A program made the position numbers and the translations under genes. Below the pieces are notes generated by a model. It had not been told where the DNA came from, ran no database searches, and saw only the letters and a list, made by a program, of their open reading frames with translations. Shown here one piece after another: positions 1,662 through 15,531 of a stretch of 64,000 bases of DNA. The stretch's first letter is position 1; each line of letters begins with the position of its first letter. Location of the stretch: the IMG/VR virus record IMGVR_UViG_3300047472_000309, positions 124,001-188,000 of that record. One strand, given 5' to 3'.

Positions 1662-2018
1662 TTACTGCGGGGTCAGTGGACTGATCGTCACGATCCACTC
1701 ACGCGTATTGGTGAAGTCAAACGCGCAGTCCAGGACGATGTGTTGATACAAACAGTCTGGGTCGCTGCCGTCGGAAATCAGAATGTCAATTCGTCCCTGC
1801 TTGCCGGGGGCGAGTGAGGGGTCGTTTTGGTAAGGCAACGTCGTCAGACGCACCTGCACGATCTTGATGTACAGGTTAAAGGTGTACTTGATCAGGGCCA
1901 TGATCGAGTACGCGGTGGTTTGCGTTTGCGTGTTGGCGAGCAGCCAAGTACGCAGGCCGTCGAGATCCACGGCGGTGTCCGGGACTACGATGGGCGTCGG
2001 GGTGGTCGTGGTCGACAT
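1662..2018 (-). CDS. hypothetical protein
   Basis: 118 aa ORF with AGGAGG RBS. Confidence 0.7.
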   Translation of the reverse strand: MSTTTTPTPIVVPDTAVDLDGLRTWLLANTQTQTTAYSIMALIKYTFNLYIKIVQVRLTTLPYQNDPSLAPGKQGRIDILISDGSDPDCLYQHIVLDCAFDFTNTREWIVTISPLTPQ

Positions 2019-4416: not shown

Positions 4417-7026
4417 TTACTTCAAGTTCAACACGAGTTCGACCACTGCCTCCACCGAGCCTGCTTCCTTGACACGGATCACCAGTTTGTCGTGCTCGAC
4501 GTAGTGCACGTCGTAGATCTCGTCGTTCACGCCCTTGTGGTGATACATCTGGTCGATGTATTTCACCATGTTGCGAGCGCGCTCCTGCCTCTCCTCGTCA
4601 TCGAGGAGTTCGATGATCACGGCCATGGCGTGATTGAAGAAGACCCACACCGGCGTGGCGAAGCAGGTGCCCGGCAAATACGCGGTCGATGCCGTCACCG
4701 GCGGCGGGGGCGGTGCTTTCTTTGTTTCCGGTGAACCCAATACCCCCACTTGAATCACGTTCTCCTGCCACATGAGTGGATTAGAGGTTTCCATCACCGC
4801 AGTCGTCACTACCAGCATGACTTCCGAATCACTGCGGTCCGGATCGAAAACCCTGACGTGATAGGTGCCCGGAATCACTTGCGAGGCTTTCTTCGTCGTT
4901 GCGTCCATCACTGGACGCTGTTGCTTAACGATTTCGAAAAAGTGATAGGCCGTCACACCGGGATAAACGGAGGTGATCGAAACCGGACCTTCATTGAAGG
5001 CGAGCCAGCTCGTGAACTCCTCATACCCCACCACGTCATCCAACAGCGTCATGAAGCGCAAGGAAACCCCGGACTGCATCATGTTGACTGCAGGGGCTTC
5101 GCCGACTTTCGGACCTTCTTTCCAGTTCTGGCGCACGATCACTGGTTGCCGGATGGTTTCCGATTCGCCCATAGCACGAATACCCTTCATGCTCGTGGGC
5201 GTTTCGTACTTGCTAGTGTCCTTGAAGAGCATCGTCGGATCAGTCTTCGGGGCTCCCGTATCCGGAATCGGGTTCGCTGCCGAGCCCACATCCACGCTCT
5301 TACCGCCCATTGCTTGAGTACGTGCCGAAAGCGGTTCGAAGACCGGCGGCGGTCCCATCTTCGGCATCTCGACTTCGAACGCACCGATGCATTCCGAGAG
5401 TTTGCCTTGGTCAATCGATTCGAGTTCCGTGTACACATCGAAACCAAACAGCAGCTTCGAGTCTGCACCCGGCGAATAGACCTTGCCCTTGATGTGGCCG
5501 CGCTCCAGCGTGTGGTTACTGCGCAAGCTCGGCGAGATGACCCGTTCGAACTTGATCACCACTTGGCTGGCCAGACGACGATCCAGATCCCGGATGAGCG
5601 CGTAGCGCCGCTGGATGTCATTCCACAGCCGCTCGATGTCCTGGACTTCGCGCGCACTGGCCGTGTTCGTGAGCACCATCAGTGCACTAGCGCCGAAGCT
5701 CAGCGAGTCGACACGGTTGACCGCCAGATGTTGATTCTGACGCAGCGTCGGGTCCGTCAGGTACAGGATCTTTTCCACTTGCTGGGGCTTGCTGCCGATC
5801 CGATACTGAGTTTCCCATTCCGCCGTGGTCGTGAACGTGAGCATACTGCCGAGCTGCATCACGCCGAGCGGCTTACCCACAACTGGTACGAGCACAGCCA
5901 TGTCGACCAGACCCAACTCCGACGAGAGTTCATCCGAATGCGGGTTCTTCGTGCCAAGCAAGCTCGCACGCTTAACTGAGACGAAAGCGAACCGGATCAG
6001 GTCCGGCTCCACATCGTGCATTTTGCAGACCTTGTTGAGCAGCGTCTTGAAGTACTCGCAATCGCGCCGCTCCACCGACTGACCTTCCAGCCATTCTAGC
6101 GCGCACTCCAGGGTCGTCGGTCCGCCGCCCTCGAGCGGGACCAACACCGGCGCCGGTTCTTCTTTCTTTTGTTCCGGCCGAGCAGTCGCCTCGGCCGCCT
6201 TGGTGTCGTTTGCTGCTGCGTTGTTTTGTTCGAGTGCCATCTCTGCCTCCTGAGCAGGTTGTTCGGTGTGGGCTGCCGTATCGACAGGCGTGGGTGGCGT
6301 GTTCATCTCGTACAGCAGACGTGTTGCCTCGATGATGAACCCGTCAGCTTCCAGAATCTGACGCTGATCAAAGGTCAGAAAGCTGGTTTCAAAACGCAGG
6401 GTTGCCAGCACCATGTCCCTCGCGCCCTTAGGGCGCATATAGAGCTTGATCAGACCCCCGCGGCCTTCACGCGGATGACGCAGTGCATTACCTCGCACGA
6501 ATTCCACTTGCTGAGGCGTGAGGTTGTGCAACTTCAGGAAGTCCCGCAACTGCCTGAAGAGGACCTCACCCTGACTACCGTCGCCGCGATACACCGACAT
6601 CCACATGCGCAGATCGTCGATCGTCGCTGCGTTCTCTTTCGAGAACTCCGACAGGTCGATCCGCTTGATGTCGTAGTCCGTGCCGAACACGATGTATTCC
6701 TTGCCGTCGACCATCATTGTCCGCAACGCGTTGTGGTGCACGGTTTCAGCCGGGCGTCCAAGAGTGATCCATCTCAGTTCGATCATGAACATCCCGGCGA
6801 GCGCGGCTGCTTCTTGCGGCCGATAGCAATGATAGACTTGCCCCCAAAGTTCACCCGCTGGTGCCTTGCTATTGACGATACATTCCGCGACGTGATCCGC
6901 CACGACGCTCTTACGCAAATAGGTGTTCGACTTGATCCAGTCACCGAGTGTCTGTTCCTCGCCCGGATTCGCGACGATCGGAAAACTGGTTTGCCCTTGT
7001 TCGTGGGCTTGTTCGAGGGTAATCAT
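4417..7026 (-). CDS. large hypothetical protein
   Basis: 869 aa ORF, no recognisable motif. Confidence 0.8.
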   Translation of the reverse strand: MITLEQAHEQGQTSFPIVANPGEEQTLGDWIKSNTYLRKSVVADHVAECIVNSKAPAGELWGQVYHCYRPQEAAALAGMFMIELRWITLGRPAETVHHNALRTMMVDGKEYIVFGTDYDIKRIDLSEFSKENAATIDDLRMWMSVYRGDGSQGEVLFRQLRDFLKLHNLTPQQVEFVRGNALRHPREGRGGLIKLYMRPKGARDMVLATLRFETSFLTFDQRQILEADGFIIEATRLLYEMNTPPTPVDTAAHTEQPAQEAEMALEQNNAAANDTKAAEATARPEQKKEEPAPVLVPLEGGGPTTLECALEWLEGQSVERRDCEYFKTLLNKVCKMHDVEPDLIRFAFVSVKRASLLGTKNPHSDELSSELGLVDMAVLVPVVGKPLGVMQLGSMLTFTTTAEWETQYRIGSKPQQVEKILYLTDPTLRQNQHLAVNRVDSLSFGASALMVLTNTASAREVQDIERLWNDIQRRYALIRDLDRRLASQVVIKFERVISPSLRSNHTLERGHIKGKVYSPGADSKLLFGFDVYTELESIDQGKLSECIGAFEVEMPKMGPPPVFEPLSARTQAMGGKSVDVGSAANPIPDTGAPKTDPTMLFKDTSKYETPTSMKGIRAMGESETIRQPVIVRQNWKEGPKVGEAPAVNMMQSGVSLRFMTLLDDVVGYEEFTSWLAFNEGPVSITSVYPGVTAYHFFEIVKQQRPVMDATTKKASQVIPGTYHVRVFDPDRSDSEVMLVVTTAVMETSNPLMWQENVIQVGVLGSPETKKAPPPPPVTASTAYLPGTCFATPVWVFFNHAMAVIIELLDDEERQERARNMVKYIDQMYHHKGVNDEIYDVHYVEHDKLVIRVKEAGSVEAVVELVLNLK

Positions 7027-8222: not shown

Positions 8223-10070
8223 TTATTCGACGTCAACCTTGCACTGGTAGATGGCCAGTGCGGCCGACTGATTTTGGCCGAGCTTAACTGCCCGATCATA
8301 GACCGCGATAAACGCGTTGTTACCTTCGCGCAGGAAGTTCTGCGGCAGATGTGCACCACCGTCGCGCACCAAGGCAGCATGGAACGCCCAGTTTTCCACG
8401 TTAGCGAGACCTTCGCCATCGAGGATGTACTGACGGAACGCGATGAGTGCACGCTTGTCGCGCTCGCTAATCAACGACACGAGCAAGCGCTCGATGAAAT
8501 GATCGAGCATGTACTCGTCATTGCCGATGACTTCGACGTCCTTGATCGCGCGAATCGGCTGCGCATGCACGATCGTGTCCATGACGTTTTCCGCGAGGAT
8601 CTTGCCAGGCGTCTGGGCTTGCACCAACTCTTCTGCCTGCGCCAGCAATGCCCGCGCTTCTTCCGTCGTGGTCCCGACGGCTTCGTCTGGCGTCGGCTTG
8701 ACGTCGCGTACTTCGCTCCACGCGTCGTGCCGCTCGCTCAGTGCTTGGCTGCGCTCCAAGGTTGCTTGACGGCTTTCTTCTGACATGGTGAGCGCGAAGG
8801 CGCCGTTATGCGTGTCGACGTTCAGCACCAGCAGCTTGAGCAACGTGTCGTCTTCGCCCGGATCGCCCTTGCCCAGAGCTTCGACTTCGACTTCGTTGTC
8901 GTCCTTCTTCTGCATGCGGAAATACACCTTCGGATTGGGCACCCCGGCTTCAATGAGTGCCTGTTCCGGATCGCCCAACTCCATGCGGAAGCCCGTGGCC
9001 GTCCCATCGTGACCCGCCACCTCCATGACGAACGTCACGATCTGCTCGTGCGTCGTGAAGATCACAGCCTGGCCCGCTTGCAGTTCCTTGGTGATCTGCG
9101 CAAAGCTATCGAGCATGCGCGTCGTCACCATGCTTCCTTCAAGGCGCGGACGCACAGCGATGCCATCCTTGCCGTAGTCGGCAAAGAACATCTGCAGCTT
9201 CGGCGCACGCTCGCCTTCGTCCAGATCACTGCGCTCGAGCGTGACAGTGAGGATGCCGGGGCCGTTCTCGACGGAGTAACGCGGCGTGTCGATCGTTTGC
9301 TTCTTGTGCGTCGTGAGCACGAGATGCTTGGACCACAGGGCCGTCTTCTCGTCGATGAACTTGAGATTGTCCACCAGTTCGTCGTTCGCCGAATGCTCGC
9401 GCAGATATTCATCGAACTCTGCACGCGTATAGAACTTGATGCTGTTGTTTTCTTGCTCGGACACTACTTGCTCCTTCTTTTGTTCGAGTGATGGGTAAAA
9501 ATCTCGCACGATCAACTCCGCCCACCAGGGCGTCATGCGGTAATGTGGCTTCCAGTGCGCCGGTGCATCTTTGGCGTCGGCCAGCTTTGTAAGAGCAACT
9601 GGCTGACTCGTCACTGACGACCGGGACTGGTTCAGCCAGAAGCCGCGGACGCACGCTATGCCGTCCCGGAAGCTTTCGCATTCCAATGGCGGATCGTCGT
9701 TTTGATGTTCTTGCGCCTTCAGACGCAAGAAATCATTGATGCTGGGATGAGTGGCCTGTCGGCTCACCGCGGTGAACGTAACAAATACACCCATCGACGT
9801 GAGGTTATCGCGATACGCCTGGTAGAAGTCAATCTTCCAGTTTAGCTCGTAGAGCAATCGAATACTGCGATCCCAGTCGTCCACGTAGAAGTTGCCGATC
9901 TCTCGCACCATCTCGTTGACGGCTTCTGAGAGGGCGATCTCGGCGGTCTGACCCGTCGCGTACTCTCTCACAAAGGCACGCATGTAGTCCACTGTCTGCA
10001 AGCGCGTGCCGTTCAGGATCGCCATGCTGGTGGGTAAGTCTCGGGGGCGCCAGATGCTCAATTCACTCAC
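8223..10070 (-). CDS. large hypothetical protein
   Basis: long ORF; probable GTG start at 10070 after AAGGA RBS (track starts at 10154). Confidence 0.75.
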   Translation of the reverse strand: MSELSIWRPRDLPTSMAILNGTRLQTVDYMRAFVREYATGQTAEIALSEAVNEMVREIGNFYVDDWDRSIRLLYELNWKIDFYQAYRDNLTSMGVFVTFTAVSRQATHPSINDFLRLKAQEHQNDDPPLECESFRDGIACVRGFWLNQSRSSVTSQPVALTKLADAKDAPAHWKPHYRMTPWWAELIVRDFYPSLEQKKEQVVSEQENNSIKFYTRAEFDEYLREHSANDELVDNLKFIDEKTALWSKHLVLTTHKKQTIDTPRYSVENGPGILTVTLERSDLDEGERAPKLQMFFADYGKDGIAVRPRLEGSMVTTRMLDSFAQITKELQAGQAVIFTTHEQIVTFVMEVAGHDGTATGFRMELGDPEQALIEAGVPNPKVYFRMQKKDDNEVEVEALGKGDPGEDDTLLKLLVLNVDTHNGAFALTMSEESRQATLERSQALSERHDAWSEVRDVKPTPDEAVGTTTEEARALLAQAEELVQAQTPGKILAENVMDTIVHAQPIRAIKDVEVIGNDEYMLDHFIERLLVSLISERDKRALIAFRQYILDGEGLANVENWAFHAALVRDGGAHLPQNFLREGNNAFIAVYDRAVKLGQNQSAALAIYQCKVDVE

Positions 10071-14394: not shown

Positions 14395-14520
14395 TGGTTC
14401 CGTCAGGTTGGTATCGAACCAACGACCTCCGTCTGGTTGGTGAGTGGGAGAGTCCACCCTACCTGGTCGGTAGGTGGGCCCACTCTGATGACGGCGCTCT
14501 ACCAACTGAGCTACTGCGGA
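14395..14520 (-). ncRNA. tRNA-like RNA 1 (anticodon loop replaced by a long hairpin)
   Basis: TCCGCAG-TA-GCTCAGTTGGTAGAGC-G-CCGTC-[insert]-GACGG-AGGTC-GTTGGTTCGATACCAAC-CTGACGGA-A-CCA. Confidence 0.8.
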
Positions 14521-14544
14521 CACTGAGGTACAACGGTAAAAGGA

Positions 14545-14677
14545 TGGTTCCAAGCGACACGAATCGAACGTGTGACCTCCCGTCTGTGTATACCAACTCC
14601 ACCACTTCCCAATACTGGGAAGCCCGGATTCGAACCGGGGGAACTACGGGCACTCTTCCAAACTGAGCTACGCTGGA
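14545..14677 (-). ncRNA. tRNA-like RNA 2 (anticodon loop replaced by a circularly permuted tRNA module)
   Basis: TCCAGCG-TA-GCTCAGTTTGGAAGAGT-G-CCCGT-[T arm, closed acceptor hairpin, D arm]-ACGGG-AGGTC-ACACGTTCGATTCGTGT-CGCTTGGA-A-CCA. Confidence 0.8.
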
Positions 14678-14702
14678 CACTGATACAACTACAACGAATT
14701 CT

Positions 14703-14787
14703 TGGTAGAGAGGGTGCGATTTGAACGCACGAAGGCAGAGCCACCGGATTTACAGTCCGGCCCTTTTAACCACTCAGGCACCTCTCT
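14703..14787 (-). tRNA. tRNA-Tyr(GTA)
   Basis: AGAGAGG acceptor, D loop with GG, CCGGA-CTGTAAA-TCCGG anticodon arm, long variable arm, GTTCAAATC T loop, ACCA end. Confidence 0.95.
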
Positions 14788-14799
14788 ATTGCTGCATAT

Positions 14800-15531
14800 C
14801 TATACCACGTTCTGATAAGACTTGCCGTTGATGATGTCAGAGATCAACGAATGATGAGCGCCGTACTGACGACCAATCTCCCGCATTCCCATCGTCCCCT
14901 TCAACTGGCGAATCTCTCGAACCTGTTCTTCTGTGAACCGAGAACTACCCACTTCTGTCCCCTGCAGAATAGGAACCAAGTTATTAGCATAGGCGTGCTG
15001 GGTATTCTCTTTGTACGTCGCCCATTCAAGATTCGTGTCGCGATTGTCGATCTTCACCGCGTTCAGGTGATTAACGATTGGCTTGTTATCTGGGTTAGGG
15101 ACAAAAGCTTTTGCGACTTCACGACTCGTCTTGATTGCGCGATTCACTCCATTGCGACCACCGATCTTGGTGATGTGATGGAGATAGTTGCCATCTACTA
15201 AATTTTGCGACACAACGCGATTTGTCCGCTTCGAATACAAATCTCCGTTTCGAGTGACCAGGAAATAATCTTCCAGGCCCTCAATCGGTTTCGCGTCGTT
15301 ATGAGGACTTGGGTCATCGGCGGTTCGCTTACGAATCTCGCCGTCCTCAATAATTAGGTTGAGAGGGAAAGGCTCCCCATCTTCCATTTCCTGCTCAAAC
15401 TGGTCCAGCGGGCGAAGCTCGTGCGTGTTACCCGATTCTTTCAAATGGGTGATCAACATGAATTCTTTGCCGTTCTTGTCTTTTGTTTGTCGCAGAACCC
15501 ATTCGTCCAAATTAGGCATTACCAAAGGCAT
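14800..15531 (-). CDS. HNH homing endonuclease (NUMOD4-HNH-HTH type)
   Basis: IEGLEDYFLVTRNGDLYS (NUMOD4-like), VAKAFVPNPDNKPIVNHLNAVKIDNRDTNLEWATYKENTQHAY (HNH), C-terminal HTH. Confidence 0.9.
   Translation of the reverse strand: MPLVMPNLDEWVLRQTKDKNGKEFMLITHLKESGNTHELRPLDQFEQEMEDGEPFPLNLIIEDGEIRKRTADDPSPHNDAKPIEGLEDYFLVTRNGDLYSKRTNRVVSQNLVDGNYLHHITKIGGRNGVNRAIKTSREVAKAFVPNPDNKPIVNHLNAVKIDNRDTNLEWATYKENTQHAYANNLVPILQGTEVGSSRFTEEQVREIRQLKGTMGMREIGRQYGAHHSLISDIINGKSYQNVV

What the first reader, a model, noticed from the sequence alone, without database searches (positions are those of the whole stretch)
14545..14677. Double-elbow RNA: a CCA-ended tRNA body whose anticodon loop is replaced by a second, circularly permuted tRNA
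Seen (minus strand): outer acceptor TCCAGCG, D arm GCTC-AGTTTGGAA-GAGT, stem strand CCCGT; then AGTTCC, a perfect T arm CCCGG-TTCGAAT-CCGGG, an acceptor-like hairpin CTTCCCA-GTAT-TGGGAAG, TG, a Leu-type D arm GTGGAGTTGGTATACAC; then ACGGG closing the shared stem, AGGTC, outer T arm ACACG-TTCGATT-CGTGT, and CGCTTGGA-A-CCA. Two tRNA cores share one 5-bp helix and neither has an anticodon. Known: T arm, closed acceptor stem, D arm is the permuted tRNA-mimic layout of bacterial YrlA Y RNAs. I know of no described fusion of this module with a full CCA-ended tRNA body, and no Ro60/Rsr gene is visible here. Inference: a decoy for elbow-recognising proteins or tRNA-targeting defence nucleases, or a scaffold.
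Basis: partly seen in the sequence, partly recalled or inferred. Interest (0 to 1): 0.85.

Follow-up and report, generated by a model that had tools for sequence, protein, structure and literature searches.

The report
Nested double-tRNA RNA in jumbo phage
A giant phiKZ-like phage carries, in its tRNA gene cluster, a conserved 133-nt RNA made of a tRNA body whose anticodon loop is replaced by a second, circularly permuted tRNA core; it cannot decode, most likely acts as a tRNA mimic, and I found no published description of this layout, which recurs in unrelated phages.

Summary
RNAalifold, run without my structure, returns the same double cloverleaf from five orthologues. Ten of its 36 pairs show compensatory changes, including pairs in the shared 5-bp helix and in the inner acceptor-like hairpin. 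No anticodon loop exists, and forced "intron" calls disagree between orthologues, so it is not a decoding tRNA.

It is not an isolated oddity. The next gene (14395-14520) uses the same scaffold: a bulged acceptor stem, A73 and an encoded CCA. Its insert is a hairpin followed by ACCA. Relatives of this scaffold occur unannotated in Ralstonia jumbo phages FLC1-1B, FLC4-3B, RP12 and RP31, and in a 323-kb contig that carries three of them.

Independent nested tRNA-in-tRNA designs occur in Bacteroides temperate phages (14 variants) and in several other contigs. In both well-sampled families the outer body drifts with covariation while the inner module keeps its sequence.

The inner module has the YrlA layout but fails Rfam YrlA membership. 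No Ro60 gene lies in the window.

Best reading: a tRNA-processed, non-decoding chassis that displays a second tRNA core as a mimic, decoy or tether. The structure is well supported. The function is inferred.

The parts
14703..14787 (-). Ordinary tRNA-Tyr(GTA) with encoded CCA. It lies immediately upstream of the finding and sets the strand and the tRNA-cluster context.
   Evidence: ARAGORN; Rfam tRNA 60.6 bits
14545..14677 (-). W1: the whole 133-nt nested double-tRNA RNA (the finding).
14671..14677 (-). Outer acceptor stem, 5' strand (7 nt). Pairs with 14549-14556, where one U is bulged after base pair 4.
   Evidence: 2 covarying pairs
14652..14668 (-). Outer D arm: 4-bp stem and a 9-nt loop with A14, G15 and GG.
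   Evidence: G-U to G-C change in L081
14646..14650 (-). Shared 5-bp helix, 5' strand. It is the anticodon-stem position of the outer body and also the 3' strand of the inner core's anticodon-stem position.
   Evidence: 2 of 5 pairs change on both sides between the window and L165
14640..14645 (-). Inner variable-loop equivalent (AGTTCC). GTTCC is conserved in W1, N1 and N3.
14623..14639 (-). Inner T arm: 5-bp G+C stem and TTCGAAT loop. Identical in all orthologues and in paralogue N3.
14605..14622 (-). Inner acceptor-like hairpin: 7 bp closed by a 4-nt loop.
   Evidence: 2 pairs with compensatory changes; a different 7-bp stem in N3
14586..14604 (-). Inner U8-G9 plus a Leu-type D arm (3 bp plus G.A, loop with GG). 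The D arm is identical to that of a genuine tRNA-Leu(TAG) on L229.
14579..14583 (-). Shared 5-bp helix, 3' strand.
14557..14578 (-). Outer variable loop (AGGTC) and outer T arm (5 bp, TTCGATT loop).
   Evidence: 4 of 5 T-stem pairs covary
14545..14556 (-). Outer acceptor 3' strand (8 nt, one bulged U), discriminator A and encoded CCA.
14395..14520 (-). W2: a paralogous 126-nt scaffold RNA. It has the same tRNA body with a bulged acceptor stem, A73 and CCA. Its anticodon loop is replaced by a long bulged hairpin followed by ACCAACCA.
14800..15531 (-). HNH homing-endonuclease ORF flanking the tRNA cluster. Context only.
   Evidence: PHROG 59, E = 6.7e-31; Pfam HNH_3 below its cut-off

Best explanation
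W1 is a real, selected, non-decoding RNA gene of a phiKZ-like jumbo phage.

An outer tRNA-shaped body (acceptor stem, D arm, T arm, A73-CCA) serves as a chassis. The host tRNA-maturation machinery would recognise and trim it: RNase P at the 5' end, trimming to the encoded CCA at the 3' end.

In place of the anticodon loop the chassis carries a second, circularly permuted tRNA core: T arm, closed 7-bp acceptor-like hairpin, Leu-type D arm. The two L-shaped cores sit head to head on one shared 5-bp helix.

The RNA has no anticodon. Its outer acceptor stem is bulged and its inner acceptor is closed. It therefore most likely does not take part in translation. It more likely works as a tRNA mimic, presenting the sequence-conserved inner elbow or core to a factor that recognises the tRNA body. 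That factor could be a processing or modification enzyme, or a tRNA-targeting defence protein. The RNA would act as a competitor or decoy, or as a tether between two tRNA-binding partners.

The 7-bp inner hairpin may also be opened by RNase P, as happens in Mycobacterium smegmatis YrlA. That would give a two-piece RNA with two acceptor ends.

Shown: the secondary structure, its conservation, the absence of an anticodon, and membership of a scaffold family.
Inferred: the processing steps.
Speculative: the molecular target.
For: Structure and selection:
- RNAalifold recovers the double cloverleaf independently.
- 10 of 36 pairs covary, including the shared helix and the inner hairpin. 0/500 shuffles match, and slid controls are near zero.
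- By direct reading of the sequence, the nucleotides needed for both elbows are present: U8, A14, G15 with C48, G18-G19, T54-A58, C56, G53-C61.
- Both halves pass ARAGORN once given a loop. The shuffle test gives 4/1500.

Non-decoding:
- No default tRNA call.
- Forced intron calls differ among orthologues: W1 Phe, N1 Val, R1 Val, R2 Met, W2 Leu.

Chassis-plus-payload logic:
- W1 versus N1 identity is 55/62 in the insert and 41/72 in the outer body.
- The Bacteroides-phage nested family shows the same pattern: the outer acceptor covaries at 7/7 pairs while the inner module is almost invariant.
- The same scaffold carries other inserts in W2, N2, N3, R1, R2 and RP12.

Context and precedent:
- All members sit in phage tRNA clusters, on the same strand as the tRNAs.
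- M. smegmatis YrlA, with a 7-bp acceptor-like stem, is cut by RNase P and receives CCA (PMC4201824).
Against: - There is no expression, processing or binding data. No cultured phage with a W1-type RNA was found.
- Only five orthologous sequences are available, amounting to about three independent lineages. The inner T and D stems never vary, so covariation says nothing about them.
- The single-sequence fold is not more stable than shuffles.
- No candidate partner protein was identified. Neighbouring ORFs are uninformative.
- Closed inner hairpins in other nested families range from 3 to about 13 bp. RNase P opening therefore cannot be a general feature.
- A 5-bp spacer between two tRNA cores may be sterically strained. 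This was not modelled.
Confidence: 0.5

Rival explanations
1. It is a Y-RNA-type tether. The inner module is a YrlA-like effector-binding domain. The RNA works with a Ro60/Rsr orthologue (or another ring protein) and an exoribonuclease, with the outer tRNA replacing the usual Ro60-binding stem.
For: - The order T arm, closed acceptor-like stem, D arm is the YrlA layout, and the Rfam YrlA model aligns to those elements locally (PMC4201824).
- Phage-encoded YrlA RNAs exist next to Ro60 genes.
- Some jumbo phages carry TROVE proteins (PMC7824862).
Against: - The Rfam YrlA score is 13.1 bits against a gathering score of 69. The two higher hits are mis-registered across neighbouring genes, the dimeric-tRNA artefact that the YrlA authors warn about.
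- The Ro60-binding motif GNCGAA(N)G was not seen on reading W1 (no pattern scan was run).
- No TROVE domain among 74 window ORFs.
- PMC7824862 reports TROVE only in jumbo-phage groups 2 and 3, not in the nucleus-forming phiKZ-like group.
Confidence: 0.1
2. It is a precursor rather than a final product. RNase P (and 3' trimming) cuts inside the inner acceptor loop, and the released half-molecules, such as a 5' tRNA-half-like fragment, are the active species.
For: - A 7-bp inner stem stacked on a 5-bp T stem is the geometry RNase P measures. M. smegmatis YrlA with such a stem is cleaved and CCA-tailed.
- W2-type paralogues carry a hairpin followed directly by (A/U)CCA in W2, R1, R2, N2 and RP12. 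From my own knowledge, this resembles the minimal bacterial RNase P substrate.
Against: - After cleavage the pieces would stay paired through 12 or more base pairs, so release is not obvious.
- The inner discriminator position is G, or C in N3, and is not followed by CCA.
- The closed inner stem ranges from 3 to about 13 bp in the other nested families, and the shortest (3-5 bp) would be poor RNase P substrates.
Confidence: 0.15
3. It is a decoding tRNA gene interrupted by an unusual intron (the permuted tRNA) that is excised to give a normal tRNA.
For: - ARAGORN with introns allowed returns a call for every member.
- Rfam's tRNA model scores the shorter-insert relatives above threshold: R1 44.4 bits, Bacteroides-phage family about 48 bits.
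- Other phage tRNAs in the scans do keep an intact anticodon loop beside an insert, for example tRNA-Asn(GTT) on L053.
Against: - No excision leaves a 7-nt loop with U33 in W1.
- The implied anticodons differ between close orthologues: R1 Val and R2 Met, W1 Phe and N1 Val. The linker of W2 varies ATCA/ACCC/ACCA among near-identical phages.
- The insert is far too short for a group I intron, and no bulge-helix-bulge motif was seen on reading the sequence.
- The insert is more conserved than the 'exons'.
Confidence: 0.03
4. It is a non-functional relic: a tRNA pseudogene produced by recombination between tRNA genes in a crowded cluster.
For: - The lineage carries other aberrant tRNA-like genes (L081 9118-9287; RP12 L350 1282-1392).
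- A homing endonuclease lies next to the cluster.
Against: - It is kept in five contigs, including a distant one.
- Compensatory changes occur in four helices and the inner arms are invariant.
- The shared helix serves both cores at once, which a simple tandem junction would not give.
- Independent nested families show the same constraint pattern.
Confidence: 0.07
5. It is a cis-acting processing or stability element: tRNA-like punctuation that directs RNase P cuts to define the ends of neighbouring transcripts.
For: - It lies between the HNH ORF/tRNA-Tyr and downstream ORFs on the same strand.
- tRNA-like punctuation is an established principle (own knowledge).
Against: - It does not explain a second, sequence-conserved tRNA core, nor the diversity of inserts on one scaffold.
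- An ordinary tRNA (Tyr) already sits there.
Confidence: 0.05

Closest known systems
YrlA (bacterial and phage Y RNA, Rfam RF02553)
   Same: - A tRNA-like module in permuted order: variable region, T arm, closed acceptor-like stem-loop, U8-like linker, D arm, closed by a helix at the anticodon-stem position.
- The mycobacterial form has a 7-bp stem that RNase P opens (PMC4201824).
   Different: - In W1 the closing helix leads into a complete CCA-ended tRNA body rather than a Ro60-binding stem with the GNCGAA(N)G motif.
- No Ro60 gene lies nearby.
- The Rfam score is far below threshold.
Phage T4 stable RNAs C and D (species 1 and 2)
   Same: - Small stable RNAs of unknown function at the 3' end of a phage tRNA cluster, next to a homing endonuclease gene.
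- rnaC has a canonical T arm and an acceptor-like stem with two central mismatches. This resembles the irregular acceptor stems of the W-family scaffold RNAs.
   Different: - On reading its sequence, T4 rnaC has no recognisable D arm and no second tRNA core.
- No sequence similarity to W1 was evident on reading.
- The structure of rnaC was read by eye only.
Engineered 'tRNA scaffold' chimeras (RNA of interest grafted into the anticodon stem of a tRNA; own knowledge)
   Same: - The same design logic: the tRNA body gives processing and stability, and the payload replaces the anticodon loop.
- The evolutionary pattern fits. The outer body is conserved only in structure and the payload is conserved in sequence.
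   Different: - Those are laboratory constructs.
- Here the payload is itself a tRNA core and the chassis has a bulged acceptor stem.
Circularly permuted tRNA genes of the red alga Cyanidioschyzon merolae (own knowledge)
   Same: The inner module has the 3'-half then 5'-half gene order, joined through the acceptor ends.
   Different: - Those genes mature into normal decoding tRNAs with an anticodon.
- W1's inner core has none and is embedded in another tRNA.
Ordinary and intron-containing tRNA (Rfam RF00005)
   Same: Acceptor stem, D arm, T arm, variable loop, A73-CCA, and a position in a tRNA cluster.
   Different: - No anticodon loop.
- Only a local 18-bit match for W1.
- Bulged acceptor stem.
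- Inconsistent pseudo-anticodons among orthologues.

Membership tests
tRNA (RF00005) | Score at or above the Rfam gathering score (29 bits), or a default ARAGORN call | tested here: not met
   The window-wide scans call only tRNA-Tyr. W1 alone gives a local 18.1-bit match that joins the outer D arm to the inner T arm.
tRNA (RF00005) | A 7-nt anticodon loop with U33 and an anticodon conserved among orthologues | tested here: not met
   No such loop can be formed. The forced calls give Phe, Val, Val, Met and Leu among relatives.
tRNA (RF00005) | Acceptor stem, D arm and T arm with the tertiary-contact nucleotides | tested here: met
   Present twice, by direct reading. ARAGORN accepts each core once a loop is supplied.
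YrlA / Y RNA (RF02553) | tRNA-like module in the order T arm, acceptor-like stem-loop, D arm | tested here: met
   The local Rfam alignment covers model positions 30-81 over exactly these elements. The layout matches the description in PMC4201824.
YrlA / Y RNA (RF02553) | Rfam gathering score (69 bits) | tested here: not met
   13.1 bits for the inner module. The 22.5- and 18.9-bit hits span two neighbouring genes.
YrlA / Y RNA (RF02553) | Ro60-binding helix with the conserved GNCGAA(N0-1)G motif on the 5' strand | tested here: not met
   By direct reading of W1 (no pattern scan was run), the motif is absent and the termini form a tRNA acceptor stem instead.
YrlA / Y RNA (RF02553) | Encoded next to a Ro60/Rsr (TROVE) gene | tested here: inconclusive
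   No TROVE hit among 74 ORFs of the 64-kb window. About 246 kb of the 310-kb contig was not inspected.
tmRNA | tRNA-like domain plus a tag-peptide reading frame | tested here: not met
   No ARAGORN tmRNA call and no Rfam tmRNA match in the window.
Group I or archaeal-type tRNA intron | A group I catalytic core (over 200 nt), or a bulge-helix-bulge motif at the exon-intron junctions, with exons restoring an anticodon arm | tested here: not met
   The insert is 62 nt. There is no Rfam intron match. No bulge-helix-bulge motif was seen on reading, and the exons do not restore a loop.
W-family scaffold RNAs (defined here: W1, W2, N1-N3, R1, R2, RP12) | A tRNA body in a jumbo-phage tRNA cluster with an irregular acceptor stem (bulge or central mismatches), A73, a usually encoded CCA, a 5-bp anticodon-position stem and a 40-65 nt structured insert | tested here: met
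   The outer body covaries across eight members.

The most novel reading that the evidence does not exclude
Phages have evolved a natural 'tRNA-scaffold' class of non-coding RNAs. A structurally conserved tRNA chassis hijacks host tRNA processing and stability, and interchangeable payloads replace the anticodon loop. In W1 the payload is a second tRNA core. After RNase P opens its closed acceptor, the product would be a two-ended 'Siamese' tRNA that binds or blocks two tRNA-recognising proteins at once. One possibility is that it neutralises a tRNA-targeting anti-phage nuclease while remaining invisible to the ribosome.
Probability: 0.25. Interest if true: 0.88.

Novelty: new variant of a known kind. 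Interest (0 to 1): 0.72.

Why it matters
tRNA mimicry by non-coding RNAs is known from a few cases: tmRNA, YrlA, and viral 3' tRNA-like structures. What such mimics do in phages is largely open. The stable RNAs C and D of the T4 tRNA cluster are still described as having unknown biological roles (PMC3014915).

This locus gives a clean, conserved and unusually explicit case. It has two complete tRNA cores and no anticodon, so any function must come from the tRNA body itself.

The same chassis-plus-payload pattern is seen in Ralstonia jumbo phages that can be grown in the laboratory. It also appears in common Bacteroides temperate phages. The question can therefore be tested experimentally.

It also matters for annotation. 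These genes are currently missed, or would be called intron-containing or pseudo tRNAs with arbitrary anticodons.

Tried and rejected
- **Rfam, whole window and local permissive scans.** Nothing reaches threshold except tRNA-Tyr. The YrlA hits are dimeric-tRNA artefacts.
- **BLAST of W1 against 50,697 phage records.** No match, so no cultured W1 carrier was found. The 10-kb megablast also found nothing.
- **Metagenome scan with an inner-module pattern.** It returned three unrelated hits only: one ordinary Ser-Leu tRNA pair and two coincidental matches.
- **Viral scan for the inner T arm plus Leu-type D arm.** It added only L226 and L227, which are not nested RNAs of this family.
- **Intron reading.** Rejected because the anticodons are inconsistent.
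- **Neighbourhood clues.** Pfam and PHROG searches of ORFs around W1, around the Bacteroides-phage RNA and around an actinobacterial tRNA-like element gave no RNA-related partner.
- **Promoter and terminator scan.** Uninformative, as expected for a phage with its own RNA polymerases.
- **Literature searches.** No description of a nested or anticodon-less double tRNA. The single 'anticodon-less tRNA' hit refers to a cleavage product of a Schlafen-like defence nuclease.
- **Walking the rest of the 310-kb contig for Ro60, RtcB or CCA-adding genes.** Not attempted. The look-up cap would cover less than half of it.

Full report
**1. What is there**

On the minus strand the window carries an ordinary tRNA-Tyr(GTA) at 14703-14787. 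ARAGORN and Rfam (60.6 bits) both call it, and it is the only tRNA either finds in 64 kb. Twenty-five bases downstream lies the finding, W1 (14677 to 14545).
- an outer acceptor 5' strand;
- an outer D arm;
- a 5-nt stem strand, then AGTTCC;
- a 5-bp T arm with a TTCGAAT loop;
- a perfect 7-bp hairpin closed by GTAT, then TG;
- a Leu-type D arm (3 bp plus a G.A pair, loop with GG), then AG;
- the return strand of the 5-bp stem, then AGGTC;
- a second T arm;
- an 8-nt acceptor 3' strand, then A and CCA.

**2. Is it more than chance?**

The support is comparative rather than thermodynamic.
- The single-sequence MFE fold is not the double cloverleaf and is no more stable than shuffles (z = -0.43). 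The double cloverleaf lies only 0.7 kcal/mol above the MFE.
- I cut the inner module at its hairpin loop and closed it with any 7-nt loop on the shared stem. ARAGORN then calls it a tRNA. It does the same for the outer body with the insert replaced by a loop.
- Of 1500 dinucleotide-preserving shuffles of the 62-nt insert, 4 gave a tRNA call at any of 53 cut points. The real insert gave calls at 11 adjacent cut points around the hairpin loop.
- By direct reading, both cores keep the nucleotides that build the tRNA elbow: U8, A14, G15 with C48, G18-G19, T54-A58, C56, G53-C61.

**3. Conservation and covariation**

Pattern scans of IMG/VR recovered:
- the source contig (L051, 310,654 bp; the window corresponds to contig positions 124,001-188,000);
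- three close relatives (L081, L151, L153);
- one distant relative (L165, 323,678 bp).

In the close relatives the terminal pair of the inner hairpin changes from A-U to C-G, together with a changed loop.

In L165 the changes are as follows:
- the shared helix changes at two pairs;
- the inner hairpin changes at two pairs;
- the outer T stem changes at four of five pairs;
- the outer acceptor stem changes at two pairs;
- the inner T arm and inner D arm are unchanged.

RNAalifold, run without my structure, returns exactly the double cloverleaf: 36 pairs, 10 of them with double changes. The pair count gives 98.9% paired cells. No shuffle out of 500 reaches any of the five measures, and structures slid by 1-3 columns show 0-1 covarying pairs.

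Caveat: there are five sequences and roughly three lineages. The inner T and D stems never vary, so their pairing rests on sequence conservation and tRNA homology, not on covariation.

**4. It is not a decoding tRNA**

No excision leaves a 7-nt loop with U33. ARAGORN with introns allowed produces a call for each member. The implied anticodons are Phe for W1 and Val for its orthologue N1. They are Val and Met for the two closely related Ralstonia phage RNAs, and Leu for W2. The supposed anticodon region of W2 reads ATCA, ACCC or ACCA in near-identical phages. The insert is too short for a group I intron, and I saw no bulge-helix-bulge motif on reading it.

**5. W1 belongs to a scaffold family**

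The next gene, W2 (14395-14520), has the same body. It starts with YCC, has a one-base bulge in the acceptor 3' strand, a D arm, a 5-bp stem, AGGTC, a T arm and A-CCA. Its insert is a long bulged hairpin followed by ACCAACCA.

The same scaffold occurs elsewhere:
- Ralstonia jumbo phages FLC1-1B and FLC4-3B carry it unannotated, immediately after tRNA-Tyr. One acceptor pair covaries (G-C to A-U), and the acceptor stem keeps two central mismatches.
- Ralstonia phages RP12 and RP31 also carry it.
- L165 has three members in one tRNA cluster. N1 is the W1 orthologue. N2 is W2-like. N3 is a second nested form with the same inner T arm, a different 7-bp hairpin and a degenerate D arm.

Across eight W2-type sequences the outer body covaries: the anticodon-position stem has three pair types at one position, and the T stem and acceptor stem also covary. 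The inserts cannot be aligned with one another. Each insert ends in a hairpin followed directly by (A/U)CCA.

For the short-insert Ralstonia RNA the Rfam tRNA model scores 44.4 bits. Pipelines could therefore label such genes as tRNAs.

**6. Nested tRNA-in-tRNA designs recur independently**

A scan for an outer D arm, an early T loop and a late T loop found several further cases:
- a family in about 45 gut-phage contigs;
- L177/L185/L091, with a 7-bp closed stem and a Leu-type D arm;
- L166;
- L209, from a 310-kb contig.

The gut-phage family has a longer connecting stem, an inner T arm, a 3-4 bp acceptor-like stub and a D arm. It has no encoded CCA.

The same pattern in cellular genomes found the gut family in three Bacteroides assemblies and a nested RNA in a Phycisphaerae MAG (L312).

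In the 14 variants of the Bacteroides-phage family, all seven outer acceptor pairs and three outer T-stem pairs covary. The inner module is almost invariant. W1 versus N1 shows the same asymmetry: 55/62 identical in the insert and 41/72 outside it.

I read this as a chassis constrained only in shape, carrying a payload constrained in sequence.

**7. Context**

The window is from a phiKZ-like jumbo phage. It gives Pfam hits to the PhiKZ major capsid protein and, below Pfam's cut-off, to phiKZ internal head proteins. An HNH endonuclease ORF flanks the cluster.

No TROVE/Ro60, RtcB, RNA ligase or nucleotidyltransferase domain was found among 74 ORFs. The other 246 kb of the genome was not examined.

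A comparative survey reports TROVE proteins only in jumbo-phage groups 2 and 3, not in the nucleus-forming group. It also reports fewer RNA-repair genes in that nucleus-forming group (PMC7824862).

**8. How it most likely works**

| Status | Statement |
|---|---|
| Shown | The secondary structure; its conservation; the absence of an anticodon; the location in a tRNA cluster on the tRNA strand |
| Inferred from established tRNA biology | Co-transcription with tRNA-Tyr; 5' maturation by RNase P; 3' trimming to the encoded CCA; formation of two elbows |
| Inferred by analogy | Opening of the 7-bp inner hairpin by RNase P with CCA addition, as shown for M. smegmatis YrlA, which has a 7-bp acceptor-like stem (PMC4201824) |
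| Speculative | The target |

Only tRNA-body features are common to all nested families. The inner core is the sequence-constrained part. The most economical mechanism is therefore mimicry of the tRNA core toward a protein or RNA that reads the elbow or the acceptor/T domain. The RNA would act as a competitor or decoy, or as a bivalent tether.

The bulged outer acceptor stem and the closed inner acceptor argue against aminoacylation and ribosome entry. This is an inference.

I give about 0.9 to 'real, selected, non-decoding nested tRNA-like RNA' and about 0.3-0.4 to the mimic, decoy or tether mechanism. The combined statement is scored 0.5.

**9. Comparison with known systems**

- **YrlA.** The inner module works like the tRNA-like domain of YrlA and has its layout. 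W1 is not a YrlA member: it scores 13 bits against 69, I saw no Ro60-binding motif on reading it, and no adjacent Ro60 gene was found.
- **T4 RNAs C and D.** The genomic situation resembles these RNAs: stable RNAs of unknown role at the end of a phage tRNA cluster, beside a homing endonuclease. Reading rnaC by eye shows a canonical T arm and an acceptor-like stem with two central mismatches.
- **Engineered tRNA scaffolds.** The design logic matches that of these laboratory constructs (own knowledge).

I found no description of a nested or anticodon-less double tRNA in Rfam 15 or in six full-text searches.

**10. Verdict**

The finding is a new variant of a known kind (tRNA-mimicking non-coding RNA). 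It also points to a broader, apparently unannotated class of phage RNAs built on tRNA chassis.

Noticed in passing
window 14395-14520 (-): A second non-canonical tRNA-like gene (W2) lies directly downstream of the finding. It has the same bulged-acceptor scaffold with A-CCA. The anticodon loop is replaced by a long bulged hairpin followed by ACCAACCA. The 4-nt 5' linker varies (ATCA/ACCC/ACCA) among near-identical relatives.
   Followed up: yes
L001:3100-3211 (FLC1-1B), L119:1600-1711 (FLC4-3B), L350:1497-1604 (RP12); also RP31 (hit H18): Cultured Ralstonia jumbo phages carry an unannotated W2-type scaffold RNA at the end of their tRNA cluster. The insert is a hairpin (with a GNRA loop in FLC1-1B and FLC4-3B) followed by (A/T)CCA. 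In RP12 the terminal CCA reads TCA.
   Followed up: yes
L165:6438-6571, 6281-6418, 6033-6161 (all -): A 323-kb viral contig has three scaffold RNAs in one tRNA cluster: a W1 orthologue, a W2-like RNA, and a second nested form with the same inner T arm but a degenerate D arm.
   Followed up: yes
L080:6911-7041 and 13 other variants (alignment A4); Bacteroides assemblies L252, L279, L301: An independent nested tRNA-in-tRNA family occurs in temperate Bacteroides phages and prophages. The outer acceptor stem covaries at 7/7 pairs and the inner module is nearly invariant. It lies between recombination genes and an HNH ORF. Rfam calls it 'tRNA' at about 48 bits.
   Followed up: yes
L177:5737-5855 (+), L166:8937-9049 (-), L209:351-460 (+), L312 about 1735-1875 (-): Further, mutually unrelated nested designs: an outer tRNA body, a connecting stem, an inner T arm, a closed stem of 5 to about 13 bp, and an inner D arm. 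Several have mismatched or bulged outer acceptor stems.
   Followed up: partly
L053:2127-2221, L009, L010, L012, L039, L045, L048, L098, L099: Phage tRNA-Asn(GTT)-like genes keep an intact CTGTTAA anticodon loop but carry a ~43-nt insert in the 5' strand of the anticodon stem. The insert has a conserved AAACAGCAA-type motif. This could be an unknown small intron or an extra arm.
   Followed up: no
L256:1111-1256, L242:6991-7138, L283:286-431 and other Arthrobacter, Pseudarthrobacter and Nocardiopsis loci: A chromosomal actinobacterial tRNA-like gene (Rfam tRNA 39-49 bits) has an ~85-nt insert containing a T-arm-like hairpin inside a long-range stem. Neighbouring ORFs have no informative Pfam domains and none is TROVE.
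   Followed up: partly
L081:9118-9198 and 9214-9287; the same in L153: Close relatives of the window carry two more aberrant tRNA-like genes downstream of W2. One is a Glu-like body with a 7-bp/5-nt-loop anticodon arm. The other has the pseudo-anticodon AAA. They also carry an extra tRNA-Asn. All three are absent from the window.
   Followed up: partly
L350:1282-1392 (RP12): An unannotated class-II-type tRNA-like gene occupies the place of tRNA-Tyr. It has a good acceptor stem, T arm and CCA, but an abnormal, enlarged anticodon region.
   Followed up: no
L001:3215-3520; L119:1715-2010; L350:1605-1900: A ~300-nt G+C-rich non-coding stretch follows the W2-type RNA and is conserved in blocks among FLC1-1B, FLC4-3B and RP12. 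It has no Rfam match and has no counterpart in the window.
   Followed up: partly
L349:1409-1547 (-) (phage T4 rnaC): T4 stable RNA C has a canonical T arm and an acceptor-like stem with two central U.U mismatches. This is reminiscent of the irregular acceptor stems of the scaffold family. It was read by eye only.
   Followed up: partly
window 14678-14702 and 14521-14544; spacers in L081, L165, L001, L350: A short motif, GTTGTA(G/C), recurs 10-20 nt upstream of the scaffold RNA genes and in their 3' flanks in several related phages. It may be a processing or promoter signal. It was not tested statistically.
   Followed up: no
window 14800-15531 (-): An HNH homing-endonuclease ORF abuts the tRNA cluster, as segB does in T4.
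   Followed up: partly
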